The notes under the pieces were generated by a model. It had not been told where the DNA came from, did no database searches, and saw only the letters and a program-made list of their open reading frames with translations. From the IMG/VR virus record IMGVR_UViG_3300042540_001822, positions 124,001-188,000 of that record: 64,000 nt of DNA; one strand, 5' to 3'. The translations under genes and the position numbers were made by a program. Shown here piece after piece: positions 36,253 through 51,390 of this stretch. The first letter of the stretch is position 1, and each line of letters starts with the position of its first letter.

Positions 36253-36719
36253 GATTCATCAATCTTTAAAATTATATTGTTGACTCTTGGAGAATCTACT
36301 ATGAAAAATTTGCTTTTATCAACTTCTTCAATTATAAATTCTGTGGGATTTATACTTCCTCTCAACCAATATTTGGTTTTTCCAATTTTGAATTCGGTAT
36401 CCAAATGATCTGGGGTTAACTTTGAAAGTCTTATCCATTTGCTTTGATTTCTGATAAACTGGGTTCGATAGTATTCCAACAAAGAATCCGTTGGTTTTTT
36501 TATTTCTCTAAAAATTTGGGCCATTAATTTGTTTTTTCCTTGAGTTATACAACCAATTGGAAAAATAATTTCCCCGGTTGAATTTGAATTTTTACTTACG
36601 ATTGTTGTGGTGTTTGCATTTGTAATCTCAAACTTGTTAGATCGTCCATAATAGGACCAAGAATGAAAAATTCCTTTGACTCTTTTCCCATCTCGCAAAC
36701 TCCAGGTTGGCAGTACCAA
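36249..36719 (-). CDS. Hypothetical protein (true start probably MAQIFRE at 36524)
   Basis: Track start overlaps the upstream gene by >100 bp. Confidence 0.6.
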   Translation of the reverse strand: MVLPTWSLRDGKRVKGIFHSWSYYGRSNKFEITNANTTTIVSKNSNSTGEIIFPIGCITQGKNKLMAQIFREIKKPTDSLLEYYRTQFIRNQSKWIRLSKLTPDHLDTEFKIGKTKYWLRGSINPTEFIIEEVDKSKFFIVDSPRVNNIILKIDES

Positions 36720-37339
36720 TAAATGTTATAGTGAAAATGATTGTGATCCCCCGAAGACATTCTCTTCGATCCATTGACCTCGTTGGTCCAAGGATCCTCT
36801 CCATCGACCAGATGTTTTAAAAGATAATTTCTATCCCAAATGGTGGCATTGTGGGAGTGTAAATAATTTTCTCCATCCGAGTACTTTAGAATTTGTTTTT
36901 TGTTTATTTCAAATGGGGTTGGCTCCAATTTATAGGATTCATAGTAGTGCAATTTGGTGTGGATTTTGATTGAGTTTGCATTGTGTAACTCAACAAAAGA
37001 AACCAATTCTTCTAAAACTTCATCCCCGGGATATGAAAAAGGCCACATATCTTCTTGGATGTAAATTACCCACTTAGAAGGAATACGTTCTAATGCCAAT
37101 CTCATCCTGGTAGAAAAACCATTTTTGTCTGTCAACCCTGTTAAAATTGGTGTAATACCGGGATTCACGGTATATGGAAGATTACGACAAGACAAATTGA
37201 TGTCATGTACATTTTTTTCCTCTGAAGCCCAATAGACCGGTACCTTTTCAAAATTCCAATTGAAGTCAAGACCATAAAGCATACCAAACCAATATTGTTG
37301 GTATGAATCACAGGTGTGAACGAGCAAAGAAAGATCCAT
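36596..37339 (-). CDS. Glycosyltransferase-like protein (GT-A fold)
   Basis: LLVHTCDSY...WVIYIQEDMW; cluster context. Confidence 0.6.
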   Translation of the reverse strand: MDLSLLVHTCDSYQQYWFGMLYGLDFNWNFEKVPVYWASEEKNVHDINLSCRNLPYTVNPGITPILTGLTDKNGFSTRMRLALERIPSKWVIYIQEDMWPFSYPGDEVLEELVSFVELHNANSIKIHTKLHYYESYKLEPTPFEINKKQILKYSDGENYLHSHNATIWDRNYLLKHLVDGEDPWTNEVNGSKRMSSGDHNHFHYNIYWYCQPGVCEMGKESKEFFILGPIMDDLTSLRLQMQTPQQS

Positions 37340-37340
37340 T

Positions 37341-38336
37341 TTAAAAATTTTGGAAATAATTCGATTTTTGAAGCTTTTCTAGATAATCTGTAATTTTAGA
37401 ACACTCTGATTCTCTCTTTTCCCCGTGTAAAACTTTGATCGATCTTTTTTCTTCCGGAATTTTATAAAAGCATAAAGAAGGATCTGGATTTTCCTCGGTC
37501 ATCCACGATGAAAATCCAGGTTGACCCTGTTCATAAAAATGTACGGTTGTCTCTAAACCATCTCTTAAATTAATGTAACACAAAGGCAAACCCTCGTTCG
37601 TTTTTTTCCAGGACAAAACATTGTAAATGGTTTCCTCGTGATAGGCAGCATAATAATTCAAATCTAAATTGAGTTTTGGTAACATAAAACAAAGCTCACG
37701 CCACATTTTCACAAAAGATAAACAATCTGGTGTGGCTAATATCACGTTAGTTGTTCTGTAGGTACCCCTCGAATCTGGAAACATCTGTAGAAATTGCATT
37801 AAAGGCCATTCTAAAGTTTTTGTGTGATCTGCCATGGGCCAACATCCTTCAAATGGATTACCTCTTTCTTTTCCAGATTCAATCATAATCATGTACTGAT
37901 GTATGCCTTCTGAACAGAGAGGATAGTTCTTAACAAGCGGAATCCAATCGAACAACTCGTCAACAATAGGAGTTCCTAAACAATCTGAATCTAGATAGCA
38001 AACCTCTTCGACACCAGACTCCAAAGCTTTTTCGATGGCAACAGTTTTGGCACAAAGGATTTGATAAATTCTTGGGCTTTTTCTTTCGATATAAAAATTT
38101 CCATCTGATTGTGTTCCAAAATCTTCAGGTCTCAAAGAATCGATAGGTAAATCAATATGAATTAGATGAACTTCCGTAATATCTTCGAAAGGATTGACGT
38201 TTTCCCGACAATTTATTCCATAAATTAGAATAGGAATGTCGGAAAATTTACGAATAGATAAAGCCAGATTTCTAGCGACCTGAAAATAATTTTCAGTCAC
38301 ATGGGTAATGTATGCTCTTTTCATAAGAACTCCCAT
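37341..38336 (-). CDS. Glycosyltransferase-like protein (DxD; start probably MKRAY)
   Basis: ARNLALSI, K..AI..AL, CYLDSDC, EETIYNVL. Confidence 0.65.
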   Translation of the reverse strand: MGVLMKRAYITHVTENYFQVARNLALSIRKFSDIPILIYGINCRENVNPFEDITEVHLIHIDLPIDSLRPEDFGTQSDGNFYIERKSPRIYQILCAKTVAIEKALESGVEEVCYLDSDCLGTPIVDELFDWIPLVKNYPLCSEGIHQYMIMIESGKERGNPFEGCWPMADHTKTLEWPLMQFLQMFPDSRGTYRTTNVILATPDCLSFVKMWRELCFMLPKLNLDLNYYAAYHEETIYNVLSWKKTNEGLPLCYINLRDGLETTVHFYEQGQPGFSSWMTEENPDPSLCFYKIPEEKRSIKVLHGEKRESECSKITDYLEKLQKSNYFQNF

Positions 38337-38443
38337 CCTCCACCTGGAAATTTTTCTTCTTGGACTAAAACATTAAAATTTTTTAGTTGTTCATTAAAAT
38401 AACAAATGTAATTAATGTACAGGTCTTGTAGTTTCATGGGTTA

Positions 38444-39271
38444 TTAATTAATTGATTTTATTTGATCAATGTTTCTTTTAGTATATCCTTCTTCTGGGAC
38501 ATTTACCAAAATCTTATTGATAAAAACCGACCTAAGGCTATTGCTTACCATATACTCACGAACACGCTCCCATAAATCACAATCACTTGGTGATACATTT
38601 CCAGTTTCCTCGTAAACATCCCGAAATAAAAGGGGTATTTTCACAAAATTCATGCAAACTGTTTGTGTTAATAAACGTGTGCAATGAGGGTAAATTTCGT
38701 GATAATCCTTGTCGCTCGGCAAACTATATAAAGGAAATTCCTGTCCATTTGTGAAATATCCTTTGGCAAAAACAAAGTCAGCCCCCGTTATCTTGATGCA
38801 CCGATTAACTTCCTCTAAATAAGTTGGATAGTAAAAATCATCATGGTTCTGCAAACATATAAAACTATGACCATCTCTCTTTGCCAACTCAATACCAGTA
38901 TTTATTGCATTTGCTCCGCCCGAACTCCAAAGCTTATCTCCATCTTCATATTTATCCCTCTCCTTGGCGTGAGGTAAATTTACAGCTTTGATTCTATGGT
39001 CGTAACTCTTGGCGATCTGGCCGAATTGTTCTTGGTCTGAGTATTTGTCACCAATCATGTAAACTTCAAAATCTTGGTGAGATTGAGCATAAATACTATC
39101 CAAAAGCCTGCGAATGTAAAATTCGCTTAGGCCATCGGGGCGTTGGTAAGTCGGAAATACTATTGGGAATGTCATATCTTTATTTTTTAATAATCCGGAA
39201 TCTAATGTTTGTTTCACATTAATCTTGATTTTTTTTATAAAAACGTTTATTTTCTGGTTGATACCATTCAT
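38444..39271 (-). CDS. Glycosyltransferase family 2 (start probably MTFPIV)
   Basis: IVFPTYQR, LLDSIYAQSHQDFE, AINTG, QNHDDFY. Confidence 0.85.
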   Translation of the reverse strand: MNGINQKINVFIKKIKINVKQTLDSGLLKNKDMTFPIVFPTYQRPDGLSEFYIRRLLDSIYAQSHQDFEVYMIGDKYSDQEQFGQIAKSYDHRIKAVNLPHAKERDKYEDGDKLWSSGGANAINTGIELAKRDGHSFICLQNHDDFYYPTYLEEVNRCIKITGADFVFAKGYFTNGQEFPLYSLPSDKDYHEIYPHCTRLLTQTVCMNFVKIPLLFRDVYEETGNVSPSDCDLWERVREYMVSNSLRSVFINKILVNVPEEGYTKRNIDQIKSIN

Positions 39272-40004
39272 CTAATGAAGCTGGGACTCTTGAATGGTAA
39301 CCTAAAAATTGTTGCATTTCATAAGTAAACGAATTCATTCTTTCATATCCTAAAGCTCTAGGATAATCTAATAATTGTTTCATAAATGATTTACTTATAG
39401 TAAAAGGAATAGCTCTTCTATTATTCTGGGTTTTATTAGGAGCTGAAGAATGCCACACATTAGAATTGAATATTAATATATCTCCTCTTTTTCCTGTTGC
39501 TTGGTGGGCATTGTTAAAAAACTCTTCATCGGTTGGTTTTCTTTCTTCTAAATGGGAACCGGTAAGAAGATAAGTCCCGCCATTCTCAATAGTAAAATCA
39601 TCTATCATAATTAAACAATTAAGCATTATAGGAAATTCTCCAGAATAAAATCTTAGATCACGATGTACTATGGATGAAAAATTAGGTTGGTTAGGTAAAT
39701 TATTTAAAGCACTAAATGAATTTAAAATACATTTACTATGGAAAAAATTATCTTGTAATGATTGAATAAACCCATTTTTAAGTAAAGTTTGTAAAAATTC
39801 TATAAATACCGGACTACTTAATAAAACATGAAGGGCAACCCCCATTGAATTAATATCATTATTATTATATAATTGAATATTTCTATGTTCTAAAAATGCT
39901 TTATCTATTTCACTAGATAGTATATCTAACCATTTTTTAGTTATTTGATTACGAACAATTACATAACCTTTTTCTTTTAATTCTTGGGATTGCTGTATTA
40001 TCAT
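39219..40004 (-). CDS. Phytanoyl-CoA dioxygenase (PhyH)-like 2OG-Fe(II) oxygenase
   Basis: HRD, ENGGT..L.GSH, GDILIF...WHSS..N...RR. Confidence 0.85.
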   Translation of the reverse strand: MIIQQSQELKEKGYVIVRNQITKKWLDILSSEIDKAFLEHRNIQLYNNNDINSMGVALHVLLSSPVFIEFLQTLLKNGFIQSLQDNFFHSKCILNSFSALNNLPNQPNFSSIVHRDLRFYSGEFPIMLNCLIMIDDFTIENGGTYLLTGSHLEERKPTDEEFFNNAHQATGKRGDILIFNSNVWHSSAPNKTQNNRRAIPFTISKSFMKQLLDYPRALGYERMNSFTYEMQQFLGYHSRVPASLDEWYQPENKRFYKKNQD

Positions 40005-40666
40005 TTTAAAAATTTTTCTCCTTCAACTCTATTTTTAATTATTTTAGCAGGGTTGCCGTATGCTAGTACATTTGATGGGATAGATTTAGTAACTAAACTA
40101 CCTGAGCCTATTACTGTGTTTTCTCCTATTTCTAATCTATCCATTATAGTTACCCCTAATGTAATAGCCGAAAATTTTCCAATTTTAACATATCCCCCTG
40201 TTAAGGATCCCGCAGATATACTAGCAAAATCTTCTATTTCATTATCATGTTCTACTTGTGCCCCTGTAGCAAAAAAAGTAAAATTACCTATTTTAGCTTT
40301 AGGATTAAAAATACATCCAGCCATTGCTACAATCCCTATTCCTAATTCAGTAGTATTTCCTATAATAACTGAGGGGTGAATAGCATTCACAAATTTAAAA
40401 TTAGGTATTAATTCATGTATTTGATTATAAACATAATACCTACTCCAATTATCTCCTATAGAAATTACTCCCCCATATATGTCATTTTGATTAATAATTT
40501 CTTTCAAATTTTCTTGACGACCTAAAATAGAATAACCAAATCTTTTACTTCCTATCTCATGGATTGAGTCAACAATACCAATAATATTATATTTTTTTTC
40601 TTTTTCAATAATATCTATAGTATAATGAGCTTGGTTACCTCCTCCTATTAAAATTATATTTTTCAC
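40001..40666 (-). CDS. Sugar acetyltransferase, NeuD/PglD hexapeptide-repeat family
   Basis: IILIGGGNQA, ISIGDN..R, IHPS, hexapeptide repeats, GNPAK. Confidence 0.92.
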   Translation of the reverse strand: MKNIILIGGGNQAHYTIDIIEKEKKYNIIGIVDSIHEIGSKRFGYSILGRQENLKEIINQNDIYGGVISIGDNWSRYYVYNQIHELIPNFKFVNAIHPSVIIGNTTELGIGIVAMAGCIFNPKAKIGNFTFFATGAQVEHDNEIEDFASISAGSLTGGYVKIGKFSAITLGVTIMDRLEIGENTVIGSGSLVTKSIPSNVLAYGNPAKIIKNRVEGEKFLK

Positions 40667-41289
40667 TTTGTATAAATTTTAAATTTAGATAAGTTGGGGT
40701 ATGGAAGCTCCAAATCAGCGTTATGCTTTTTGCTACCATCGGTGTTGTAAAATTGATTCATTAACAACAAGCCCCTCGTTGCAAGTTCGGGCATCATATA
40801 GAAATTCCATCCGAGCATATCAAAATGATCATCGTGATAACTGCACTCTCTCCTACCGCTATACCTTGCTCTTTTAAACCACAAATAAGCCTGATGATCA
40901 TCGGTAAGTATTGCTCCTCCCTTGGATAACTTAAAATGCTTGTACGGACCTGTAAACGATATGCACATATGGGTATTGGGAAGATACATATCAGCCGTAA
41001 ACCTTAAAGCACTATCCCAAACCCGGCTCGGTTTGAGTTGGTATGCGCCCTTCAATGTCGTTCCTTCAACTTCTTCAAAATCCACCCTTGCCCCTGCGTG
41101 GATGATTTCGCAAGGCACGGATGGGTATGTTCGTTCCGGGATAGTAATTGTTGTGCCTCCAACTTTCTCGTACATCAATGCTAAAAACAGTCCATTGGAT
41201 TGGTTGTCTAAGCACACTGCATAAGGAGCGCCGGTGTAGTCCGCAAGGCGTTTTTCAAATTCGTTGGTAATGTCATAAACAGTTTTCAT
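40663..41289 (-). CDS. Short DegT/DnrJ/EryC1/StrS aminotransferase-like protein (208 aa)
   Basis: FEKRLADYTG, DSA, SFTGPYKHF..SKGGAILTDD, GWNFYM. Confidence 0.8.
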   Translation of the reverse strand: MKTVYDITNEFEKRLADYTGAPYAVCLDNQSNGLFLALMYEKVGGTTITIPERTYPSVPCEIIHAGARVDFEEVEGTTLKGAYQLKPSRVWDSALRFTADMYLPNTHMCISFTGPYKHFKLSKGGAILTDDHQAYLWFKRARYSGRRECSYHDDHFDMLGWNFYMMPELATRGLLLMNQFYNTDGSKKHNADLELPYPNLSKFKIYTK

Positions 41290-41324: not shown

Positions 41325-41966
41325 TTAAATTTTGATTTTTTTTAAATAACCATTAGGGTTGAAAGTAACATTGTAACCATAAAAATCACACCATTTTCTA
41401 TCTATTTCGAATTGTGGATTTTGGGGCAAAAATTCTCCTATTGCTCTAAGAGGACCTCCGTCATAGTTTTTTTCGATGCCCATCCAATTCACAGTTCCAT
41501 CTTCAACGATCATATAGGAATCTTCGCTGATTAAATCTTTGAATTTATTCATCACAGACAAAACATCGTTATATTTGTGTGACCCGTCTTCAATCAACAT
41601 AATTTTTTCAAATGAGGATGCATAATCCAAGTTGTATTCTTGATAACCTCCCAAGAATCTCTGAATTCTTGGATGTCGATTAATCAAACCCCTCTTTTCT
41701 TCGGAATTTGATAAAAAAGTTTCATCCTGAATATCCACAGTATGAACCATACCTTTACCTATATTATTTAAAATATCACCCAAATACAGGCAGGATCCTC
41801 CATAATTAGTCCCTATCTCTATTATCAAATCGGGTTTTATTTCATTAATTATCATTTGATACATTACGTAATCAAATGGGGATTTTTCAGTTATGATTCC
41901 TCTATATAAAGTTTTTAGATGTCCATCCATGATACCATCTAAATTTAAGTTGTATGAATTGTTCAT
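41325..41966 (-). CDS. CmcI / rhamnosyl O-methyltransferase family
   Basis: EKSPFD, KPDLIIEIGT..GGS, EDGSH, YMIVED. Confidence 0.88.
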   Translation of the reverse strand: MNNSYNLNLDGIMDGHLKTLYRGIITEKSPFDYVMYQMIINEIKPDLIIEIGTNYGGSCLYLGDILNNIGKGMVHTVDIQDETFLSNSEEKRGLINRHPRIQRFLGGYQEYNLDYASSFEKIMLIEDGSHKYNDVLSVMNKFKDLISEDSYMIVEDGTVNWMGIEKNYDGGPLRAIGEFLPQNPQFEIDRKWCDFYGYNVTFNPNGYLKKIKI

Positions 41967-41975
41967 TTTTTTATT

Positions 41976-42380
41976 TTAAAGATCCACTCTCATAGTATTG
42001 CACTCCCTGAAAAATCCACATCTTTCATAGAAATTTATTCTCTCATCAAAACAGGATAGAATAACCTTATAACATCCAAGATATCTTGCTTTTTCCAATG
42101 CTTTTTGAACTAATAAATAACCAATTTTATTACCTCTAAATTTTTCTTTTACTGCTACATCCTCAATATACCCAGCTATTCCCCCGTTCCTTATTAATTT
42201 TTTTTGAATATGAAGGGTAATTGTTCCTATAATTTCTTCCCCTTCAACCGCTACAAAGTTATGATTGTTAAGCATCCACTGGTCTAAATTGTGAATTTCA
42301 ATTTCTGTAATCCACCATGTTTCACTAAGGACTTTCAATAAACCTAGTTCATCTCCTTTTTGAAATTCTCGAATAATCAT
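41976..42380 (-). CDS. GNAT acetyltransferase, glucosamine-6-P N-acetyltransferase-like
   Basis: GYIEDVAV...RGNKIG..LV...GCYKVILSC...FYERCGF. Confidence 0.88.
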   Translation of the reverse strand: MIIREFQKGDELGLLKVLSETWWITEIEIHNLDQWMLNNHNFVAVEGEEIIGTITLHIQKKLIRNGGIAGYIEDVAVKEKFRGNKIGYLLVQKALEKARYLGCYKVILSCFDERINFYERCGFFRECNTMRVDL

Positions 42381-44683: not shown

Positions 44684-45598
44684 TCAATTTTTCCAAGCCC
44701 ATATCATGTTTCCAGTGTGGTGTGTTTGGAATCCATTTTCTGAAAAGATAAGCAACAATTGATCCGGAGGATGAATATGATATTCTAAAACTATCTTTGG
44801 TATAGACTTTAAAAATTCAGAGCTTAAGTAAGGCAAAATTTCCCATTCACATCCTTCACAGTCGATTTTCAAAAAATCTATTTTTACTCCAGATTCTCTA
44901 GCCCATTCTTCCAGAACAACTCCTTGGCAAGAAACACTTTCATCAGTATGATCAAACGAAAAAGAAACTGAATTCAAAACACTAAAGTCATGTATGTTTA
45001 ATCTTAAATCTTTTTTTTCAGACCACACGGCTGAATTGTTAACATGAATTGGTAAATCCCCAAAATTTGTTTGTATAAAGTTTGATAATTTGGGATCTGG
45101 TTCAAAAGAGTGAACTTTAGAAGCACCTTGTGTAATTGAAAAATAAGTGAATAAACCAATATTAGCCCCAATATCAACAACAACATCTCCAGGTTCTACT
45201 TTACAACGATCGTGGTTATATTCACCGTTAAGAAAAATCTCCCAAAGTACCAATCCGGTTGATAAGTCTTTTTTTGAAAGATTACTCCCTATATTTTTCA
45301 ACTTGTTTTTTTGGTCTAAATTTCTTACATCATGTTGAAAAACATCCGAGTAATCACAAACTTGAAGTAGGATTTCTTCAGTTTTAGAATCTTCCACTAC
45401 AAAAGTCATTAATTTTGTAATTCTACCGTCATAAGATGCCCAGTAGGAACATTTTGGAAGGACTTTCATTGTTTCCCCCCTGAAAATTAAACTAGTATAT
45501 GAATCAATGAACTTAATTACAATTTCTTTTTCTTCATCAAAATGACTTGTAAAATCTATTCCGTTTCTATCTGGTAAAATGTGATTCAATGAGATCAT
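44684..45598 (-). CDS. FkbM-family methyltransferase
   Basis: VVDIGANIG, FEP, IDFLKIDCEGCE, VLEYH. Confidence 0.92.
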   Translation of the reverse strand: MISLNHILPDRNGIDFTSHFDEEKEIVIKFIDSYTSLIFRGETMKVLPKCSYWASYDGRITKLMTFVVEDSKTEEILLQVCDYSDVFQHDVRNLDQKNKLKNIGSNLSKKDLSTGLVLWEIFLNGEYNHDRCKVEPGDVVVDIGANIGLFTYFSITQGASKVHSFEPDPKLSNFIQTNFGDLPIHVNNSAVWSEKKDLRLNIHDFSVLNSVSFSFDHTDESVSCQGVVLEEWARESGVKIDFLKIDCEGCEWEILPYLSSEFLKSIPKIVLEYHIHPPDQLLLIFSENGFQTHHTGNMIWAWKN

Positions 45599-45604: not shown

Positions 45605-46381
45605 TTATTTGTTGTTTTGTTTAAGAACTTCTTTTTCTTTATTGAAGCAATGTAAAGAAGTGATGTGCATGGTAAAAAGTCCAGGTTTTACATTTTCCCA
45701 AGATTCGGGACTTCTCTCTTTCAATTTTTCTAGAACCCAAAAAACTTTGCGGCAAGCCATGTAAATATCGTCCCTGAAATGGCGGAGGTAGTCGCAAGAC
45801 CTTATGTAATACACGATGTGTAAATAATCTGCTCTTCTCATAAAATGATAACCGATTGTACAAGGAACTCGTTCACCGTGAACAGAACCAGTGTCTTCAG
45901 GGAACCACAAAGGAAGAAATGCCTGCCTTGTAAAAGGTTCTCTTTGTAGCAAATCGATCACATCCCCAAAGTCACCATAATGGTACCTGATACCAAACAT
46001 GGTAGATTTGGGTTCTTCCGATGCAAATTTAGGCCAGAGCCTTTCGGGATAAGTGTGAGAAAATTTCTCCTCGATTTTAAACTGGGCGTTCTTCTTTTGG
46101 TTGAAAGGCCACCATTCGTTCGAAGGTGGTGGATTTAAAGGTTGGCCCCCTATTCTTTCTTCAAAATGATCGTCCGCCCAGGGAAGATTAGGTCTGACCT
46201 CCTCGCGTAGCTCCTGAAGTGTACCTGGCACAAACATAGAGAAAGATGTATTTAAAGTTTCCCACATGTCGTCGGGAGAAGTTATACCCTGCCATCTCTC
46301 GGTCTGTACAACATATCCATAGTCGATCAATTTTTCCTTAGCCCACTTGATGGCTTGTGAGGGCTTTTGAAATGTTTTCAA
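45605..46381 (-). CDS. Thymidylate-synthase-fold pyrimidine-modifying enzyme, dCMP hydroxymethylase-like
   Basis: TRQA, VPCT (catalytic Cys), IRSCDYLRHFRDD with Asp at the TS Asn177-equivalent position, SLH. Confidence 0.8.
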   Translation of the reverse strand: MKTFQKPSQAIKWAKEKLIDYGYVVQTERWQGITSPDDMWETLNTSFSMFVPGTLQELREEVRPNLPWADDHFEERIGGQPLNPPPSNEWWPFNQKKNAQFKIEEKFSHTYPERLWPKFASEEPKSTMFGIRYHYGDFGDVIDLLQREPFTRQAFLPLWFPEDTGSVHGERVPCTIGYHFMRRADYLHIVYYIRSCDYLRHFRDDIYMACRKVFWVLEKLKERSPESWENVKPGLFTMHITSLHCFNKEKEVLKQNNK

Positions 46382-46455: not shown

Positions 46456-47109
46456 TTATTGGTTCAACCAAAAAAATAATTCTTCATTACCAATCAAATT
46501 TAAATCCCTAACTCTATTTTTTTGAAAAACTTTATATTCGAAATATGGGTTGTCAAAGGGAACGAGCTCTTGTCTTCCTCTTTTAATAAGACCAACTCCC
46601 TCATCGATATTAAGAGTACAAATATTTAAGTCAGATCTAGTTGCCTTTAATTTATAAATCGTTTTCCAAACCGTTCCGTTCCATGGCTGTCCCCAATTAT
46701 CCTCAACTAATCTGGTATAATTTTCTTCATACATAAATGGGTCACAATCATGCAAAACAATAACACCATTTTCTGATAAGTGATTCAAAGAATTCAATAT
46801 GTCTTTTTCCACCTGATAAGAAAGATGTAATCCATCAATAAAAATTAGGTCCCACTTATAATCAGGAGGTAAATCCAACAAATTATTTTCTAGCCTAATA
46901 AAGAATTCATCCGATGTGTATTGGTATTTAACTGGATTTTCCTGGTACTCTAAACCTGGATCTACCCCGGATTTTTCTGGACATTGAATTAAATCGAAAC
47001 AATCCCACGGGAATCTAACTCCTATTTCTAAATAGGTATTAAAATTTTTTGTTTGAATGATTTGGTTGATTACTTCAGATCTGTGCATGAATATAAACTT
47101 GTTTACCAA
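46456..47109 (-). CDS. Class I SAM-dependent methyltransferase-like
   Basis: YLEIGV, GVDP, DLIFIDGLH, VLHDC, WNGTVWK. Confidence 0.85.
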   Translation of the reverse strand: MVNKFIFMHRSEVINQIIQTKNFNTYLEIGVRFPWDCFDLIQCPEKSGVDPGLEYQENPVKYQYTSDEFFIRLENNLLDLPPDYKWDLIFIDGLHLSYQVEKDILNSLNHLSENGVIVLHDCDPFMYEENYTRLVEDNWGQPWNGTVWKTIYKLKATRSDLNICTLNIDEGVGLIKRGRQELVPFDNPYFEYKVFQKNRVRDLNLIGNEELFFWLNQ

Positions 47110-47172: not shown

Positions 47173-47583
47173 TTATCTATTCTTACTGCTCATTTTCCGG
47201 TACAACTTGTATTCTGGTGTTTCCTCAATGGAATCTAATTCGAATCTCTGGAAATTTCCGAACCTCATAGGTCCATTTAAATTAAACCTTTTGTGTGGTT
47301 CGACTGAATCCTCGTAAAATTGACAAATTTGCTCGTGATATTCGGAATCTTTTTCAATAAAATATTCTTCTGGGTTGTGATAGTAGTCAAAAAGATACTC
47401 TGCCCATTCGGAGGGATTCTTTCCTCCTCCAAATTGTTCGACAAATTTTTCCATTTGGATTTCTTCATCCGTCATGCTTATACCCAAATTTTGGAAACCT
47501 GAAATCAAATCATCTAGATCTGACCCAATATCATTATTTTCATTCAAAATTGAGAACACCCAAAAGGATTTTAAATTATTCAT
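47173..47583 (-). CDS. Hypothetical protein, possibly virion-associated
   Basis: MNNLKSFWVFSILNE N-terminus; GATATATAA directly upstream of ATG. Confidence 0.75.
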   Translation of the reverse strand: MNNLKSFWVFSILNENNDIGSDLDDLISGFQNLGISMTDEEIQMEKFVEQFGGGKNPSEWAEYLFDYYHNPEEYFIEKDSEYHEQICQFYEDSVEPHKRFNLNGPMRFGNFQRFELDSIEETPEYKLYRKMSSKNR

Positions 47584-47615
47584 GATAAATTATATATCCA
47601 TTTTTTTGCCCACAA

Positions 47616-47644: not shown

Positions 47645-47658
47645 AAGCTTGTCCGGAA

Positions 47659-47817
47659 TTACTGAACTGCCGTGGTTGAATCTACAGAGGTAGTGTCCGC
47701 AGATTCAACTACTGTAGAATCCACTGTTGTCTCCTCGGAAGGAGCAGTTTCTTCTGTTGGTGTAGCACATGAGCTCAGAATCAAAGCTGAGACAAGCAAG
47801 AAAAACAAATTTTTCAT
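47659..47817 (-). CDS. Small lipoprotein, 52 aa (MKNLFFLLVSALILSSCATPTEETAPSEETTVDST...)
   Basis: Manual translation; signal peptide with LSSC lipobox; Ser/Thr/Asp-rich tail; own terminator. Confidence 0.8.
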   Translation of the reverse strand: MKNLFFLLVSALILSSCATPTEETAPSEETTVDSTVVESADTTSVDSTTAVQ

Positions 47818-48133: not shown

Positions 48134-48149
48134 TTAATTTTTGATTTTA

Positions 48150-48938
48150 TTAAAATTTTGAGGATTCGAGATATTGTCTTTTTCTTTCATTCAGTGTTTT
48201 TCTTCCTTCCGATAACCAATTTTCCTGTGCGTTTGAATTTTCATCTTTAGTTTCTGATGGATAAGTTAATGAATTAGGATGAACACGATAAACATAACTG
48301 GGATATTGAAGATATTCAATTTTTCCTCTTAGAGAAAGCTCAAAGTTCATCGGCCAGTCGGAATAAGGAAATTCTTCCATATATTTTTGAAATAAATCAG
48401 GATAATTCACAAAAAATCTAGAAGATGAAGTAACACAGTTGTGTTGATTAGCAATAAAATCCGAAGAAGTATATTCCTCTTTTTGTAAGTGTTCAGGAGG
48501 CCCAAAAAAATAATTTCCTGTTCTTAGAGGTTCGAATTTTTTTTCATTCTCGTTGTATATTATGTAAGCCGTGAAACACATTGATAAATCTTTATTATTT
48601 TCCATAATTTCATACTGATTTTGGAGTTTGTTCGGATCTATCCAATAGTCATCAGCATCTAAATAAGCTATGTAATCACCGGTTGCCTGTTCAAGTAAAA
48701 ATTTTGTATTTTGTATTTCTCCGGAATTAGATCTAGAAAAATAGCGAAACGAAAATTTATGTCCTGGAAGTATATTTTTAAAGTACTCTAAAACTTCTAA
48801 ACTTTGATCCGTAGATCCATCATCCGAAACCAGAATTTCTACGGGGAAAGAAGTTTGTTGACATAAAACGGAAAATAAACAGGTGTCCAAAAATCTACCA
48901 TAATTATAATTAGGTATAATGACCGTTACTTTTTTCAT
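48150..48938 (-). CDS. Glycosyltransferase family 2
   Basis: VTVIIPNYNYGRFL, VSDDGSTD, YIAYLDADDYW. Confidence 0.93.
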   Translation of the reverse strand: MKKVTVIIPNYNYGRFLDTCLFSVLCQQTSFPVEILVSDDGSTDQSLEVLEYFKNILPGHKFSFRYFSRSNSGEIQNTKFLLEQATGDYIAYLDADDYWIDPNKLQNQYEIMENNKDLSMCFTAYIIYNENEKKFEPLRTGNYFFGPPEHLQKEEYTSSDFIANQHNCVTSSSRFFVNYPDLFQKYMEEFPYSDWPMNFELSLRGKIEYLQYPSYVYRVHPNSLTYPSETKDENSNAQENWLSEGRKTLNERKRQYLESSKF

Positions 48939-48948
48939 TTTTAAAAAA

Positions 48949-49629
48949 TTATTGATTTACAAAATAAAACATTGTTTGATGTTCCCCGTTATTATTTACA
49001 TCCCAATAAAAAGAATGTCTAACTTTTCCTGGAATAAAAAAAGTTTCATTAAGAATAGGATCGTGTGTTTCTACTGCTATTTTATTTATTTTATTTAAAA
49101 TTGATTCATCCAAGTTTTGGAATAAATCATATTCTCCACCTTCAATGTCACACTTCAAAAAGTCAATTTTTTCCAAATTGAAAATTTTGAAAACATCCTC
49201 CATTTGCAAATAAAGGGGGTTGTGTTTTGGTGACCATAAGTGTGTTGGATGTAGGGATTTTCCCAAAACAGAAGCATTCAAATATTTTACATTGTTGTGT
49301 TCTTTTGTATTTTCTATAAGACAAGAAAAAACTTCATAACCTCCATCTATAGCTATTATTTCTTTACATTTTTTTGCTGCCAAGTGAGTAAAGAAACCAA
49401 CATTTGCCCCCAAATCAACCACCACATCTTCTGGATTAAGTTTGCAATCCCACATTTCATAAATGCAATTAGTTTCAGAGAATTCCCAGCCATAAATTTC
49501 CTTGAAGAGAAATTCATAACCAAAAAAAGAATTGGAACTTAAAACAAAATCAAGATTTTGATTCCAATAATGGTTATTCTTGTCTGAAAAAAGTTTCCAA
49601 TTTTTTCCTGTCATTTTATTTATATTCAT
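48949..49629 (-). CDS. FkbM-family methyltransferase
   Basis: VVDLGANVG, IDFLKCDIEGGEY, AVETH. Confidence 0.9.
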   Translation of the reverse strand: MNINKMTGKNWKLFSDKNNHYWNQNLDFVLSSNSFFGYEFLFKEIYGWEFSETNCIYEMWDCKLNPEDVVVDLGANVGFFTHLAAKKCKEIIAIDGGYEVFSCLIENTKEHNNVKYLNASVLGKSLHPTHLWSPKHNPLYLQMEDVFKIFNLEKIDFLKCDIEGGEYDLFQNLDESILNKINKIAVETHDPILNETFFIPGKVRHSFYWDVNNNGEHQTMFYFVNQ

Positions 49630-50055
49630 TTATTTTTGGCTATCACCTTTCGAAACCCGATAAGAATCTGACTCAATGTGGTGAGTTGAAACTTCAAAGA
49701 TTATACCCTCTGTTATTGCTTCCAGTTGATGTGGTGTTCCTGGCTTTTGTCTCACACAGTCACCTTTTTTTAAGGTTGTCTCAACTACATCTGCATTCCT
49801 GGTGTCGATGAATCTATAAATGAAAGTTCCTTCCTGAACATACCACGTTTCATCCTTAATCAAATGGTAGTGCATAGAAAATTTGGCTCCGGCTTTGAAG
49901 CAAAGAAGTTTCCCACAATACAATTCGTTGTTTTCGAAAACAATCTCTTGCCCCCACCCTTTTGGTATATTACAACTGGGGCATTCCAAAGCATTGTAAA
50001 TATGTGAAAGGTTGATTTCAATCATTTCAATTGGAGGATTTGGCAAATAGGACAT
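49630..50055 (-). CDS. Cupin-domain protein, sugar isomerase-like
   Basis: PKGWGQE, YCGKLL, SMHYH..KDETWYV, PGTPHQL. Confidence 0.85.
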   Translation of the reverse strand: MSYLPNPPIEMIEINLSHIYNALECPSCNIPKGWGQEIVFENNELYCGKLLCFKAGAKFSMHYHLIKDETWYVQEGTFIYRFIDTRNADVVETTLKKGDCVRQKPGTPHQLEAITEGIIFEVSTHHIESDSYRVSKGDSQK

Positions 50056-50135
50056 TTTAATTCGATATATAATTTTATGGAATTTGAATAAAAGTTTTCG
50101 AATTTTGGTTTATATTTGTAAATAATTAATTAATA

Positions 50136-50342
50136 ATGGAAATTGATAAAATAATCAATTCGATCAAAAATCACCTGCTGAGCATCGAGCTTTCATCTGA
50201 TGGGGAAGATAAAAAAAATCATTTGATTGTAATTAAGCAGGAAGTTGAAAACTTATCTGTGGAATATCAAAAATTAAAAGAAACACACGATACAATCATT
50301 TCTCAGTTGAAACAGGAAATTTCTAGATTGAATAGGCTTTGA
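50136..50342 (+). CDS. Small coiled-coil protein
   Basis: ORF track; upstream GATATATAA (50064) and TATATTTG (50111) on plus strand. Confidence 0.7.
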   Translation: MEIDKIINSIKNHLLSIELSSDGEDKKNHLIVIKQEVENLSVEYQKLKETHDTIISQLKQEISRLNRL

Positions 50343-50364
50343 TTTCAATTATTTAAAATTTTTG

Positions 50365-50449
50365 CGGAGAGGGAGGGATTCGAACCCCCGGATCCTTGCG
50401 GATCGGCTGTTTTCAAGACAGCTCTCGTAAACCACTTGAGTACCTCTCC
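50365..50449 (-). tRNA. tRNA-Ser, anticodon TGA; CCA not encoded
   Basis: Acceptor GGAGAGG/CCTCTCC; anticodon arm GCTGT-CTTGAAA-ACAGC; long variable arm GATCC-GCAA-GGATC; T-loop TTCGAAT. Confidence 0.95.
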
Positions 50450-50457
50450 AATTTTTA

Positions 50458-51390
50458 TCAAACGAAAAATTCTAACAAACCTCTTTGGTTGTATTTGACC
50501 TTATTTTCTTCATTCAAAACAAATTTTTTTGTAAGGATAAATTCTTTATCTTGTATTTTAACTTCTGTTAATTCTTCAGAAGGATAATACCAATACGTTC
50601 CAGGGTATAGATCAAAACTTTTACCATTCACTTCACACTGTAAACCATAATCTTTATTGTTCATAATATACAAATAATAGCCTTGATCAGAAGGAATAGT
50701 TTCACAGATTATTTCAATCCCGGAAATTCTATTAATATAACTGTTTTCGAAACCTTGAATAGAATTAAATCCATCACACGATTTTATCAAAAATAATTCC
50801 TCTTCTGGATAAAAAAAATTATAAAAATCATCTTCTAAATATCCACTTAAATTTTTGATGTCTGGACTTTCTTTAGTAATTGGAAATCTAAAATTCCTAA
50901 CGAAAAAATCAATATTTCCACCAAACAATAAAGTATGATAGCCATAACTTGATTCAGTTGGATATTTGTGAAAAATCAATTTTTTATTTTCTTTCAACAT
51001 CTCTGAAAGATGTAAATCAAATGTTTGTAAATCAATATCACCAATTAGATTGTCACACTCAGTGAAAAAAAAGTTGACAAATCCCAAACGTTGACCTAGT
51101 GAAATTCCATTGATCATATTTCTTAAAATAGCGATAGAGTGACCTGGATTTGAGATAGAAACTCTAAATTGGGAGTTAGCGAACCAAAACCAAGATGTAG
51201 ATTCTAACATGATGTTTTCCGAATCATAAACACAATAATCAACCATTTTTTGAATTTCTTCTGGTATTGGGAGGTGTGAGCACACCATCAATTTGTAATT
51301 TGTTTTTTTCAATCTGGTCAAACAATCTTTTAAAATATCCAAATGATATTGACTAGAGTGATAAGAATTGACAATAATTATCTTTTCCAT
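50458..51390 (-). CDS. Unknown protein, paralogous to 43543..44649
   Basis: SY...DILKDCL...LMVCSHLP...DYCVYDSEN. Confidence 0.7.

What the first reader, a model, noticed from the sequence alone, without database searches (positions are those of the whole stretch)
36596..51390. 15-kb viral glycan-tailoring cluster
Seen: two clear GT2 plus two more GT-like ORFs, two DegT-type aminotransferases, NeuD/PglD and GNAT acetyltransferases, CmcI, two FkbM and another SAM methyltransferase, a PhyH oxygenase and a cupin. More GT25, methyltransferase and FkbM genes lie at 29862, 31052 and 12990. Established: these families make and decorate amino- and methyl-sugars in O-antigen and capsule pathways. Inference: the product is a DNA-base glycan, a virion-protein glycan or a host-surface modification for superinfection exclusion. 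Sequence alone cannot tell which.
Basis: partly seen in the sequence, partly recalled or inferred. Interest (0 to 1): 0.6.

Follow-up and report, generated by a model that had tools for sequence, protein, structure and literature searches.

The report
Phage glycan-building island around thymidylate-synthase homolog
A large uncultured lake phage carries a real, swappable 15-kb block of sugar-building and sugar-decorating genes wrapped around a cytosine-type thymidylate-synthase homolog; such islands are known in big aquatic phages, and what the sugar is attached to is still open.

Summary
Window 36.6-51.8 kb (all on the minus strand) carries two Pfam GT2 genes, three more GT-A-fold proteins, one full DegT aminotransferase and a conserved 208-aa mini-DegT. 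It also has NeuD/PglB/VioB and GNAT acetyltransferases, CmcI, two FkbM and one Methyltransf_24 methyltransferases, PhyH and a cupin.

It is phage DNA, not host or chimeric. The contig is a 219-kb virus record. The same gene order occurs on independent contigs, and the central 6 kb is in at least 20 lake or freshwater runs from 17 studies.

- a thymidylate-synthase homolog with Asp at the Asn177 position, in mid-island (45605-46381);
- a tRNA-Ser, a flanking tmRNA, and a 52-aa Ser/Thr-rich lipoprotein;
- the mosaic nature of the island, whose modules are swapped among relatives.

The held record has no NDP-sugar synthesis genes and the island encodes no polytopic membrane protein.

The target remains unresolved. 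My estimates are host envelope glycan remodelling 0.35, virion glycosylation 0.25, and DNA cytosine glycan 0.2. Comparable islands are described in cyano- and pelagimyophages, so this is a new variant of a known kind.

The parts
51908..52347 (-). tmRNA gene flanking the island on its upstream side, followed by its own terminator-like hairpin (51906-51883)
   Evidence: Rfam RF00023, 67.2 bits, E 1.4e-24, full model. ARAGORN also finds it. One reading frame ends in ...VALAA-stop.
51413..51805 (-). 130-aa protein with one N-terminal hydrophobic segment; function unknown; conserved gene at the island edge
   Evidence: No Pfam family above cut-off. TM-like segment at residues 1-28. 83-86% identical in L001 and L003.
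50458..51390 (-). GT-A-fold glycosyltransferase-like protein with a C-terminal beta-sandwich
   Evidence: AF2 pLDDT 86.2. VIA-align Z 12-14.4 over residues 1-220 to many GT-A glycosyltransferases. Foldseek supports this. Three paralogous copies lie next to DegT+GNAT in the unrelated viral contig L081.
50365..50449 (-). tRNA-Ser (anticodon TGA) inside the island
   Evidence: ARAGORN; Rfam RF00005, 53 bits.
49630..50055 (-). Cupin_2 protein; possibly a sugar isomerase, epimerase or oxygenase (function inferred only)
   Evidence: Pfam 3.7e-9; phrog_7851 3.9e-35. 64-79% identical in L001, L003, L012 and L112.
48949..49629 (-). FkbM-family SAM methyltransferase
   Evidence: Pfam PF05050, 4.9e-7.
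48150..48938 (-). GT2 glycosyltransferase, soluble
   Evidence: Pfam PF00535, 8.3e-26. No TM segment. About 51-54% identical in L001, L111 and L112.
47659..47817 (-). 52-aa lipoprotein ORF. It has a lipobox (LSSC) and a Ser/Thr-rich mature part with three D-(S/T)-(A/I/L/V/M/T) motifs. It has its own sigma70-like promoter (47868-47839) and a hairpin + T-run (about 47640-47605).
   Evidence: Sequence read; promoter 11/12 match; motif scan. Equivalent small lipoproteins that keep the motifs occur in L001, L003, L018, L019 and L021. A 52-53-aa gene is called at this position in L090, L111 and L112.
47173..47583 (-). 136-aa acidic protein of unknown function
   Evidence: No family hit. 63% identical in L003.
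46456..47109 (-). Methyltransf_24 SAM methyltransferase
   Evidence: Pfam 3.4e-8; phrog_27561 9e-10.
45605..46381 (-). Thymidylate-synthase homolog, a second copy beside a canonical ThyA. In E. coli ThyA numbering: catalytic Cys is kept, Asn177 is Asp, Asp169 is kept, and Leu143 is Arg.
   Evidence: phrog_160 5e-25; TIGR03283 1.3e-6. Alignments to L. casei TS and T4 gp42. C174, R194-S-C-D197 and D205 are invariant in 45 homologs. The canonical ThyA at G000 123996-125126 keeps Leu, Asp and Asn at these positions.
44684..45598 (-). FkbM-family SAM methyltransferase
   Evidence: Pfam PF05050, 1.6e-11.
43543..44649 (-). GT-A-fold glycosyltransferase-like protein with a C-terminal beta-sandwich; the most constant member of the glycan cassette
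   Evidence: AF2 pLDDT 90.6. Foldseek finds GT-A hits (XylT1, glycogenin, GTA/GTB, PBCV-1 A64R). Homologs occur fused to GT92 or GT17 domains. Present in L001, L003, L110, L111 and L112.
42386..43546 (-). Full-length DegT/DnrJ/EryC1 sugar aminotransferase
   Evidence: Pfam 1.1e-72. Best NCBIfam hits are ArnB and PseC, both below cut-off.
41976..42380 (-). GNAT N-acetyltransferase, paired with the DegT gene
   Evidence: Pfam 8e-19. The DegT+GNAT pair recurs in L001, L081, L082, L084 and L111.
41325..41966 (-). CmcI / rhamnosyl O-methyltransferase family protein
   Evidence: Pfam PF04989, 4.5e-32. 98% identical in L001.
40663..41289 (-). 208-aa mini-DegT-like protein
   Evidence: Pfam matches profile positions 23-98 only. 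Sequence read. 78-82% identical in L003, L110 and L111.
40001..40666 (-). NeuD/PglB/VioB-family sugar N-acetyltransferase
   Evidence: TIGR03570, 166.3 bits, above the 160.8 cut-off. PglD_N + Hexapep.
39219..40004 (-). PhyH-type 2OG/Fe(II) dioxygenase
   Evidence: Pfam PF05721, 8.8e-21, full length. Absent from the IMG/VR relatives fetched up.
38444..39271 (-). GT2 glycosyltransferase
   Evidence: Pfam PF00535, 1.6e-11 in two stretches. Confirmed by the own-genome scan.
37341..38336 (-). GT-A-like protein resembling GT8 / nucleotide-diphospho-sugar transferases
   Evidence: Atlas feature and structure neighbours are GT8, Nucleotid_trans and DUF6625, and domains of viral GT-methyltransferase fusions. 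40-63% identical in L001, L003, L012, L110, L111 and L112.
36596..37339 (-). 247-aa protein of unknown function that always travels with 37341-38336; left end of the island
   Evidence: No family hit. 49-68% identical in L001, L003, L110, L111 and L112. In run X8 the flanking core differs by about 2% and the island by 0.07%, with the switch at about 36264-36292.

Best explanation
What it is (about 0.9 sure). This is an accessory, horizontally exchanged glycan-assembly and glycan-tailoring island in a large (at least 219 kb) uncultured freshwater phage. The phage is only distantly related to T4-like phages and probably infects Bacteroidota.

How it works.
- The island encodes only soluble enzymes.
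- No sugar-activating or dehydratase genes were found in the held record, so it must draw on host NDP-sugars. These probably include NDP-4-keto-6-deoxyhexoses.
- It turns part of that pool into N-acylated amino-dideoxy sugars, using DegT+GNAT and mini-DegT+NeuD/VioB-like pairs.
- It assembles an oligosaccharide with five GT-A-type transferases.
- It O-methylates the product with CmcI, two FkbM and Methyltransf_24 enzymes.

What it acts on (inferred, about 0.35). The enzymes work at the cytoplasmic face on the host's own lipid-linked envelope glycans (LPS O-units, capsule, or the Bacteroidota protein O-glycan). The host's flippase and transfer machinery then exports the altered glycan. The infected cell's surface is re-decorated, possibly including the island's own exported Ser/Thr-rich lipoprotein. 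This would block superinfection or adsorption of progeny to infected cells and debris.

The TS homolog in the middle is taken to be a conserved nucleotide-metabolism gene around which the cassette has inserted.
For: Families and folds.

No polytopic membrane protein anywhere in the island. No PF01370 epimerase/dehydratase and no PF00483 nucleotidyltransferase in the 219-kb record.

Viral and not chimeric.

Mosaic, swappable content.
- Identity to L001 ranges from 32 to 98% gene by gene.
- L003 swaps in ATP-grasp, TylF and carbamoyltransferase-like genes.
- L111 adds a sugar N-formyltransferase (Formyl_trans_N + N_formyltrans_C), WbqC and a GNAT-NodS fusion.
- L112 lacks the amino-sugar branch altogether.
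- L006, L010, L013 and L016 have no such genes next to the TS homolog.
This is the diversification pattern of O-antigen loci.

The core cassette (43543, DegT, acetyltransferase, GT2, 37341, mini-DegT, 36596) also sits on a 254-kb contig with no TS homolog within 10 kb.

The exported lipoprotein with three D-(S/T)-x motifs is conserved in relatives.

Signs of a Bacteroidota host: a T9SS Por_Secre_tail protein next to the island in relative L112, and a tmRNA tag frame starting GEN... and ending ALAA (taxonomic meaning from my own knowledge).

Precedent: LPS or cell-wall gene sets in hypervariable regions of cyano- and pelagimyophages are read as host-surface modification (PMC12801897, PMC7029224). 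Several glycosyltransferase groups are core in large freshwater 'moraphages' with predicted Bacteroidota hosts (PMC12619734).
Against: - There is no initiating phosphoglycosyltransferase, flippase, polymerase, ligase or Gtr-type membrane protein.
- Every proven phage O-antigen modification system that I know of belongs to temperate phages and includes membrane proteins.
- No integrase was looked for or noticed.
- The host-surface reading of the analogous cyano- and pelagiphage islands has never been tested experimentally.
- The TS homolog with Asp177 sits inside the island in at least six related loci (window, L001, L003, L012, L111, L112). That is what a DNA-hypermodification cluster looks like.
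- A second GT/methyltransferase group lies in the plus-strand block among tandem ~270-aa paralogs taken to be structural genes.
- The host is not identified.
Confidence: 0.35

Rival explanations
1. Virion glycosylation. The soluble GT-A enzymes glycosylate capsid, tail or fibre proteins in the cytoplasm before or during assembly, with an N-acyl-amino-sugar, O-methylated glycan. The glycan shields or tunes the particle, as in mycobacteriophages and giant viruses.
For: - All island proteins are soluble and no lipid-carrier or export component is present. This fits a purely cytoplasmic pathway best.
- Two of the GT-A proteins carry an extra beta-sandwich that could bind a protein acceptor.
- Structural hits include the PBCV-1 capsid-glycan transferase A64R.
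- A second group of glycosyltransferase and methyltransferase genes (G000 about 105.3-112.2 kb) lies on the plus strand among tandem ~270-aa paralogs taken to be structural genes.
- Mycobacteriophage capsid and tail-tube glycans are documented (cited in PMC12619734).
- From my own knowledge: Mimivirus fibril glycans use an aminotransferase + acetyltransferase + methyltransferase logic.
Against: - No direct evidence exists.
- The island lies among nucleotide-metabolism and replication genes rather than structural genes.
- Expression timing could not be inferred: the T4 late promoter is not used and the candidate motif was inconclusive.
- Virion glycosylation is not known in T4-like or Bacteroidota phages.
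Confidence: 0.25
2. DNA hypermodification. The TS homolog makes a C5-modified dCMP (5-hydroxymethyl type) that enters phage DNA. Island glycosyltransferases then attach tailored sugars to it, protecting the genome from restriction and other DNA-targeting defences.
For: - The TS homolog keeps the catalytic Cys and has Asp at the Asn177 position. A canonical ThyA with Asn is also present, which mirrors the T4 td + gene 42 pairing.
- Asn177Asp switches preference to dCMP, and Asp-177 homologs are enriched on contigs with modified cytosine (PMC13326640, PMC8670742).
- TS-homolog-associated GT-A and GT-B clusters are proven DNA glycosylation pathways (10.1101/2023.12.21.572611, PMC13326640).
- The TS homolog lies inside the island in six related loci.
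- Relatives carry a carbamoyltransferase (L012; a weaker homolog in L003) and a non-specific endonuclease beside it.
- A small P-loop kinase lies 6 kb upstream. A P-loop kinase family also sits near the TS homolog in 24 distant loci.
- All enzymes are soluble.
Against: - No dCTPase/MazG, dUTPase, dCMP deaminase or thymidylate-kinase-like gene was found in the 219-kb record.
- Position 143 is Arg, not the Asp/Glu of hydroxymethylases. Asp169 is kept, so it is not a 5-hydroxy-dCMP synthase. A plain dCMP methylase would give no hydroxyl to glycosylate.
- The TS homolog is a widespread backbone gene. It lies next to dCMP deaminase and PolB in distant phages and is annotated as thymidylate synthase in Gordonia and Mycobacterium phages.
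- The glycan cassette exists without a TS homolog within 10 kb in L110.
- All GT-like proteins are acidic (pI 4.9-6.2), against pI 9.05 for T4 beta-GT.
- Five transferases and four methyltransferases would make an unusually large DNA adduct.
- Carbamoyltransferases also decorate sugars.
Confidence: 0.2
3. A mixed bag. The interval is a hyperplastic region where unrelated accessory genes pile up: some for DNA cytosine modification, some for glycans with different targets, some decaying. There is no single pathway.
For: - Gene-by-gene identity to the nearest relatives is strongly uneven.
- A tRNA, a tmRNA, a separately transcribed lipoprotein gene and an internal terminator split the interval.
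- The mini-DegT is truncated.
- GT and methyltransferase genes are scattered elsewhere in the genome.
Against: - A defined subset (43543, DegT, acetyltransferase, GT2, 37341, mini-DegT, 36596) travels together into different genomic contexts. This argues for a functional unit.
- Genes are tightly packed and co-directional, with overlapping stops and starts.
- GC content matches the rest of the genome.
Confidence: 0.15

Closest known systems
LPS / cell-wall synthesis-and-modification gene sets of T4-like cyanomyoviruses (P-SSM2, S-SCSM1, S-SCSM2R) and pelagimyophages
   Same: - Large aquatic myoviruses with many glycosyltransferases and sugar-tailoring genes in hypervariable, poorly syntenic regions.
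- The target has not been tested experimentally.
- They are usually read as host-surface modification (PMC12801897, PMC7029224).
   Different: - Those sets include NDP-sugar epimerases/dehydratases, KdsA/B, RmlC or RfaE. Here no SDR epimerase/dehydratase or nucleotidyltransferase was found.
- Pelagimyophage islands sit in the structural 'host recognition cluster'. This island sits among nucleotide-metabolism genes and wraps a TS homolog.
- The phage backbone is only 24-30% identical to T4-like PolB and topoisomerase.
Thymidylate-synthase-homolog-associated DNA glycosylation clusters (T4 gene 42 + beta-gt; RB69/DLP3 arabinosyl-5-hydroxycytosine; RL38JI; metaviromic GT-A/GT-B pathways)
   Same: - A second TS homolog with Asp at position 177 sits beside a canonical ThyA.
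- Glycosyltransferases and sugar-modifying genes lie immediately around it.
- Content varies among relatives.
- All enzymes are soluble (PMC13326640, 10.1101/2023.12.21.572611, PMC8670742).
   Different: - No dCTPase or Tmk-type nucleotide kinase was detected; a T4 gp1-type dNMP kinase was not searched for.
- Residue 143 is Arg and residue 169 is Asp, so it fits neither the hydroxymethylase nor the 5-hydroxy signature exactly.
- The transferases are acidic GT-A proteins with no demonstrated JGT-like motif.
- Amino-sugar, N-acyl and O-methyl tailoring has not been reported for DNA glycans in the papers read.
Virion glycosylation systems (mycobacteriophage capsid/tail-tube glycans; chlorovirus PBCV-1 A64R; Mimivirus fibril glycans)
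   Same: - A cytoplasmic pathway of soluble transferases.
- Methyltransferases are combined with GT-A enzymes.
- Aminotransferase + acetyltransferase logic.
- There are structural hits to A64R.
   Different: - No glycan has been shown on this phage's particles.
- Giant viruses encode their own 4,6-dehydratases, and this phage does not.
- The comparison with Mimivirus rests on my own knowledge and not on a tool result.
Bacterial O-antigen amino-sugar branches (VioA/VioB, PglE/PglD, PseC/PseH, sugar N-formyltransferases)
   Same: DegT next to a GNAT, and a DegT-like gene next to a NeuD/PglB/VioB acetyltransferase. An N-formyltransferase and WbqC occur in a relative's island.
   Different: - No equivalog-level NCBIfam match: DegT scores 194 bits against cut-offs of 423-631.
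- The upstream dehydratase and the downstream steps (for example PseG/I/F) are missing.
'Moraphages', large freshwater phages with predicted Bacteroidota hosts (PMC12619734)
   Same: Freshwater origin, 200-307 kb, glutamine-synthetase-like gene, Clp protease, two PolB orthologous groups (here a split PolB), and several core glycosyltransferase groups.
   Different: Membership was not tested by sequence. The one cheap marker tried (a class II Lys-tRNA-ligase domain) was absent from the record.

Membership tests
Pre-replicative cytosine hypermodification cluster (TS homolog + DNA glycosyltransferase) | TS homolog with catalytic Cys146 and Asp at position 177 (dCMP preference) | tested here: met
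   C174 and D205 are invariant in 45 homologs. D205 aligns with D179 of T4 gp42. The RSCD motif is identical to E. coli ThyA, with the Asp at +11 from the Arg. Criterion taken from PMC13326640 and PMC8670742.
Pre-replicative cytosine hypermodification cluster (TS homolog + DNA glycosyltransferase) | Acidic residue at position 143 (hydroxymethylase) or Asn at position 169 (5-hydroxy-dCMP synthase) | tested here: not met
   Position 143 is an invariant Arg (R171) and position 169 is Asp (D197). The product therefore cannot be predicted from the published signatures.
Pre-replicative cytosine hypermodification cluster (TS homolog + DNA glycosyltransferase) | dCTPase and a dedicated dNMP/nucleotide kinase in the genome | tested here: not met
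   There is no MazG, no dUTPase/DCD, and only a 12-bit Thymidylate_kin fragment in 219 kb. A 130-aa AAA_33 P-loop protein at 52383-52775 is the only candidate kinase. A T4 gp1-type dNMP kinase was not searched for. The record is about 88% complete, so absence is not proven.
Pre-replicative cytosine hypermodification cluster (TS homolog + DNA glycosyltransferase) | Glycosyltransferase of a DNA-acting type (beta-GT-like GT-B, or JGT/TarP-like GT-A with a basic DNA groove) | tested here: inconclusive
   A GT-A fold is present with TarP, GT8 and A64R among many hits. However, all five proteins have pI 4.9-6.2, against 9.05 for T4 beta-GT. The JGT motif could not be tested because no JGT sequence was on hand.
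Pre-replicative cytosine hypermodification cluster (TS homolog + DNA glycosyltransferase) | Modified cytosine in virion DNA | not testable with these tools
   Needs nucleoside mass spectrometry or native long-read signal.
Bacterial-type O-antigen / capsule locus | Initiating phosphoglycosyltransferase, flippase/polymerase or ABC exporter, ligase | tested here: not met
   No protein in 36.2-51.8 kb has more than one hydrophobic segment, and no such Pfam family was hit.
Bacterial-type O-antigen / capsule locus | NDP-sugar synthesis genes (nucleotidyltransferase, 4,6-dehydratase) | tested here: not met
   PF00483 and PF01370 are absent from the whole record, while the control genomes all ring.
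Bacterial-type O-antigen / capsule locus | Several glycosyltransferases plus amino-sugar, acyl and methyl tailoring enzymes | tested here: met
Gtr-type seroconversion module of temperate phages | GtrA flippase, membrane-anchored GtrB, polytopic GtrC | tested here: not met
   There are no polytopic membrane proteins, and the GT2 proteins lack TM segments.
Hypervariable glycan (LPS-gene) islands of large aquatic myoviruses | Multiple GT and sugar-tailoring genes in a region whose content differs between otherwise syntenic relatives | tested here: met
   Presence/absence and identity matrix across 89 loci. Gene orders.
Hypervariable glycan (LPS-gene) islands of large aquatic myoviruses | T4-like cyano- or pelagimyophage backbone | tested here: inconclusive
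   RNA ligase, gp47-like exonuclease, topoisomerase II and PolB are present. But identity to T4-likes is only 24-30%, and blastp finds no match to T4 gp41, UvsX or gp44/62.

The most novel reading that the evidence does not exclude
The island is a DNA-hypermodification gene cluster of a kind not yet described. The Asp-177 TS homolog supplies a C5-hydroxymethyl-type cytosine. Acidic GT-A enzymes then build on it an oligosaccharide containing N-acylated 4-amino-dideoxy sugars and O-methyl sugars. The N-acetyl, N-formyl, carbamoyl and methyl decorations are swapped between related lake phages as an arms-race variable.
Probability: 0.15. Interest if true: 0.85.

Novelty: new variant of a known kind. 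Interest (0 to 1): 0.5.

Why it matters
Large aquatic phages spend a striking share of their genomes on sugar chemistry, and for none of these islands has the acceptor been shown.

This locus is a good test case for four reasons.
- It is abundant and stable in many lakes.
- It has a compact conserved core with interchangeable amino-sugar branches.
- It sits around a cytosine-type TS homolog.
- It carries an exported, possibly glycosylated lipoprotein.

Three cheap assays would separate the three readings: nucleoside MS, virion glycoproteomics, and host envelope profiling.

If the DNA reading were right, the known chemistry of DNA glycans would extend to amino and methyl sugars. If the host-surface or lipoprotein reading were right, it would be the first mechanistic case of a lytic phage rewriting a Bacteroidota cell surface.

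Tried and rejected
Searches that found nothing useful:
- Megablast of the island against GenBank phages gave no match.
- tblastn of 43543-44649 and 37341-38336 against GenBank phages gave no match. These families are known only from uncultured sequence.
- The profile of the 43543 family had no sequence match in the PDB.
- blastp of T4 gp41, UvsX, gp44, gp62, beta-gt and gp42 against all ORFs of the genome hit only PolB, and none of these proteins themselves.
- A profile scan of IMG/VR with the 43543 family returned only the five relatives already known.

Expression timing:
- The T4 late promoter TATAAATA is not used; only 2 of 20 copies lie upstream of genes.
- Two enriched upstream 'motifs' turned out to be the conserved coding ends of two multi-copy paralog families.
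- GATATATA lies within 45 nt upstream of an ORF start in 38 of 50 copies. PHROG annotation of ten such genes did not show that they are late genes. No timing claim is made.
- Sigma70-like sites in the island are no more frequent than in shuffles (79 vs 75.7).

Host:
- The DegT scan of species genomes gave only an Acidobacteriota MAG at 54% and a Prevotella at 26%. No host can be inferred from that.
- No T9SS tail domain was found in the phage record itself.

Other:
- Moraphage marker test: no class II Lys-tRNA-ligase domain.
- Raw-read runs X21 and X22 laid no reads, so they gave no depth test. One exact-protein look-up failed.
- The mycobacteriophage virion-glycosylation paper is not held.
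- I considered that the short DegT is a fresh pseudogene and rejected this. It has the same length and 78-82% identity in three other islands.
- The large profile search and the complex predictor were not used.

Full report
**Setting.** The window is bases 124001-188000 of a single 219,475-bp contig with 35.8% G+C. It is held as an IMG/VR virus record, linear, about 88% complete by CheckV. Almost all window genes lie on the minus strand. The island is flanked by phage genes:
- RNA ligase at 20431-21531;
- a gp47-like repair exonuclease at 31651-33186;
- topoisomerase II at 59893-61278;
- the polymerase half of a family-B DNA polymerase at 57894-59060;
- a canonical thymidylate synthase at the window's start.

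Identity to T4-like phages is low: topoisomerase about 28% and PolB 24-30%. blastp finds no match to T4 gp41, UvsX or gp44/62. I therefore call it a large phage distantly related to T4-likes. Its traits resemble the 'moraphages' described from lake metagenomes (PMC12619734): freshwater origin, more than 200 kb, a glutamine-synthetase-like gene at 34308-35369 and ClpP at 52789-53463, a split PolB, and many glycosyltransferases. I could not test membership by sequence, and one marker tried was absent.

**The observation.**
- The second 'DegT' (40663-41289) is a 208-aa mini-protein. Only its first 75 residues match the profile, though an active-site-like stretch is still readable. It has the same length and 78-82% identity in three other islands, so it is maintained.
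- There are three 'GT-like' ORFs. 50458-51390 and 43543-44649 fold with high confidence (pLDDT 86 and 91) into a GT-A domain followed by a beta-sandwich. VIA-align gives Z up to 14.4 to GT-A transferases. Foldseek hits include glycogenin, xylosyltransferase and the PBCV-1 capsid-glycan transferase.
- The nearest Atlas clusters to 37341-38336 are GT8-like and DUF6625-like, together with domains of viral GT-methyltransferase fusions.
- Homologs of 43543-44649 occur fused to GT92 or GT17 domains.

Counting the two Pfam GT2 genes, the island holds five putative transferases, four SAM methyltransferases, two N-acetyltransferases, one and a half aminotransferases, a PhyH dioxygenase and a cupin.

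**Is it host DNA or a chimera?** No.
- G+C is even across the interval.
- The exact TS-homolog protein, with the same neighbours, is on 10 contigs. These include a 231-kb GenBank metagenome contig and independent Logan assemblies.
- The central 6 kb is held nearly word for word in at least 20 lake or freshwater runs from 17 studies dated 2016-2025.
- Contigs of two runs tile the left junction at even depth.
- In run X8 the flanking core genes differ from the window by about 2% (26 differences in 1,245 bases). The island part differs by 3 in 4,237, and the switch falls at 36264-36292, the island's left edge. That looks like a recombination breakpoint.

1. The gene at 45605-46381 is a thymidylate-synthase homolog (phrog_160, 5e-25; Pfam below threshold).
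2. A tRNA-Ser lies at 50365-50449. A full-length tmRNA lies at 51908-52347 with its own terminator, just upstream of the island.
3. Between 47888 and 47583 lies a separately transcribed 52-aa lipoprotein gene. It has an 11/12 sigma70-like promoter, a lipobox, and a hairpin with a T-run. Its mature part is 43% Ser/Thr, and all three Asp residues sit in D-(S/T)-(A/I/L/V/M/T) motifs. Small lipoproteins at the equivalent place in relatives have diverged in sequence but keep such motifs. From my own knowledge, this is the sequon of the general protein O-glycosylation system of Bacteroidota. That is a lead, not a test.

**Comparative anatomy.** Relatives of the TS homolog were found at 77 viral loci. 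I compared gene content across the 89 viral loci fetched up to that point.
- The TS homolog is a backbone gene.
- The glycan genes around it vary. The nearest relatives (L001, L002, L028) share about 15 genes, at identities from 32 to 98%.
- L003 replaces several genes with an ATP-grasp enzyme, TylF-type and class I methyltransferases and a carbamoyltransferase-like gene.
- L012 has a strong carbamoyltransferase, a non-specific endonuclease and an FkbM-GT34 fusion.
- L111 adds a sugar N-formyltransferase, WbqC and a GNAT-NodS fusion.
- L112 keeps only the core and lacks the amino-sugar branch.
- L006, L010, L013 and L016 have the TS homolog directly beside the core genes. Giant GT1-FkbM and GT4/GT9 proteins lie 6-10 kb away.

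A constant core emerges: 43543, 37341, 36596 and a GT2, usually with the cupin and a methyltransferase. Amino-sugar and acyl branches attach to it interchangeably. The core with DegT, acetyltransferase and mini-DegT also occurs on a 254-kb contig with no TS homolog within 10 kb.

**What the pathway can and cannot do.**
- No protein in the island has more than one hydrophobic segment. There is therefore no flippase, polymerase, ligase, initiating transferase or Gtr-type component.
- The whole record lacks SDR epimerases/dehydratases and sugar nucleotidyltransferases, while all control genomes ring.
- It follows, as inference, that the enzymes tap host NDP-sugars. The aminotransferase needs a host-made keto-sugar.
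- The gene pairs DegT+GNAT and mini-DegT+NeuD/PglB/VioB mirror PseC/PseH and PglE/PglD or VioA/VioB. No equivalog-level match exists, so the sugar cannot be named.

**The TS homolog.** In E. coli ThyA numbering it keeps Cys146 and Asp169, has Asp at 177 and Arg at 143. These residues are invariant in 45 homologs. D205 aligns with Asp179 of T4 dCMP hydroxymethylase (hhalign probability 82.6%). The phage's other TS (G000 123996-125126) is canonical: Leu, Asp and Asn at those positions, with an insertion.

Published work bears on this.
- Asn177Asp shifts preference to dCMP.
- Asp/Glu at 143 goes with hydroxymethylation, and Asp169Asn with 5-hydroxylation (PMC13326640).
- Asp-177 homologs are enriched on contigs with modified cytosine, and a TS homolog plus carbamoyltransferase makes 5-carbamoyloxymethylcytosine (PMC8670742).
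- GT-A as well as GT-B transferases next to TS homologs glycosylate DNA (10.1101/2023.12.21.572611).

So this phage probably makes some C5-modified cytosine nucleotide. Whether the product has a hydroxyl group cannot be read from the sequence.

Against a DNA glycan:
- No dCTPase/MazG, dUTPase, dCMP deaminase or Tmk-like kinase was found.
- In distant phages the same TS family sits between a P-loop kinase, dCMP deaminase or dUTPase and PolB, an ordinary nucleotide-metabolism context.
- Cultured-phage homologs are annotated simply as thymidylate synthase.
- The glycan cassette can live apart from the TS homolog.
- All five GT-like proteins are acidic, while T4 beta-GT is basic.
- Carbamoyltransferases of this family also decorate sugars (my own knowledge).

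**Host.** A close relative (L112: TS homolog 83%, exonuclease 77%) encodes a 628-aa protein with a T9SS C-terminal sorting domain next to its island. The tmRNA tag frame begins GEN... and ends ALAA. G+C is low, and the moraphage paper predicts Bacteroidota hosts. Together these point to Bacteroidota. The phage record itself has no T9SS-tail protein.

**Weighing the three targets.**
- Host envelope remodelling (0.35) fits the enzyme families, the O-antigen-like swapping of acyl and methyl decorations, the dependence on host sugar pools, the exported Ser/Thr-rich lipoprotein and the precedent readings in cyano- and pelagimyophages (PMC12801897, PMC7029224). It is weakened by the absence of any polytopic membrane component and by the lack of experimental precedent in lytic phages.
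- Virion glycosylation (0.25) fits the all-soluble set, the extra beta-sandwich domains, and a second GT/methyltransferase group lying among tandem paralogs in the plus-strand block at G000 about 105-112 kb.
- A DNA glycan (0.2) rests on the TS homolog. It is the most novel reading.
- A mixed bag cannot be excluded (0.15).

All three main readings are testable with standard assays.

**Verdict.** The finding is real and more elaborate than described. In kind it matches the glycan-gene islands already reported from large aquatic phages. Its particular make-up is a new variant: no sugar activation genes, GT-A plus beta-sandwich families known only from uncultured viruses, modular amino-sugar branches, a cytosine-type TS homolog, and a tRNA, tmRNA and lipoprotein in or beside it. 

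Noticed in passing
window 51908-52347 (-): Full-length phage-encoded tmRNA (Rfam 67 bits) with its own terminator. ARAGORN's tag peptide looks wrong: another frame gives a long tag that starts GEN... and ends ...VALAA-stop.
   Followed up: partly
window 47659-47817 (-), promoter 47868-47839, hairpin about 47640-47605: Stand-alone 52-aa lipoprotein gene. Its Ser/Thr-rich mature peptide carries three D-(S/T)-x motifs. Relatives have diverged small lipoproteins at the same place that keep the motifs. It may be an O-glycosylated surface peptide or a superinfection-exclusion factor.
   Followed up: partly
window 45605-46381 (-) and window 1-1126 (G000 123996-125126): Two thymidylate-synthase-family genes in one phage. 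One is canonical (Leu143, Asp169, Asn177) with an insertion of roughly 40 residues between the Cys and RSxD motifs. The other is divergent, with Arg143 and Asp177. The divergent family is widespread: 77 viral loci, plus Gordonia, Mycobacterium, Streptomyces and Serratia phages at 40-46% identity.
   Followed up: yes
window 57894-59060 (G000 181894-183060) and G000 202484-204055: The family-B DNA polymerase is split into an exonuclease-half gene and a polymerase-half gene about 19 kb apart.
   Followed up: no
G000 105.3-112.2 kb (L096 12304-19183), + strand: A second glycan-like gene group lies in the plus-strand block. It has a 427-aa glycosyltransferase (phrog_24687, 4e-170; 45-49% identical to Xanthomonas and Stenotrophomonas jumbo phages), a 433-aa methyltransferase-domain protein, a metallophosphoesterase and a GT2. 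One more GT2 hit lies at G000 196321-196698.
   Followed up: partly
G000 77.2-114.7 kb (+) and 191972-192844 (-): About 17 paralogous genes of roughly 270 aa, many in tandem, share a nearly identical junction. The coding end reads ...GFDELGLF-stop, then about 30 bases containing GGATATATA, then a start MKH.... They may be a fibre or decoration protein family.
   Followed up: no
window 13878-15622 and 24482-27076; G000 59.4-60.7 kb: A second multi-copy family: at least 17 tandem genes of about 100 aa sharing a conserved internal block (about 70 nt, containing ACCGACCCAA).
   Followed up: no
whole genome; e.g. window 47592-47599, 36029, 29859: The octamer GATATATA occurs 50 times, and 38 copies lie within 45 nt upstream of a same-strand ORF start. 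Many of these are repeat-family junctions. It is a candidate promoter or translation-start element. The T4 late promoter TATAAATA is not used.
   Followed up: partly
window 34619-40500, run X8: In an independent 2025 freshwater run the core genes left of the island differ by about 2%, while the island differs by 0.07%. The switch is at 36264-36292, suggesting recent exchange of the island between strains.
   Followed up: partly
window 34308-35369, 52383-52775, 52789-53463, 53971-54255, 55309-56814, 12244-13011: Other accessory genes nearby: a glutamine-synthetase-like protein, a 130-aa AAA_33 P-loop protein, ClpP, thioredoxin, a RimK/ATP-grasp protein, and a protein with a DnaA C-terminal helix-turn-helix.
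   Followed up: no
L112 1615-3501 (-); L012 7054-9346; L111 6140-9938: Relatives' islands carry other genes. L112 has a T9SS Por_Secre_tail protein, a pointer to a Bacteroidota host. L012 has a 557-aa carbamoyltransferase plus a non-specific endonuclease. L111 has a sugar N-formyltransferase, WbqC and a GNAT-NodS fusion.
   Followed up: partly
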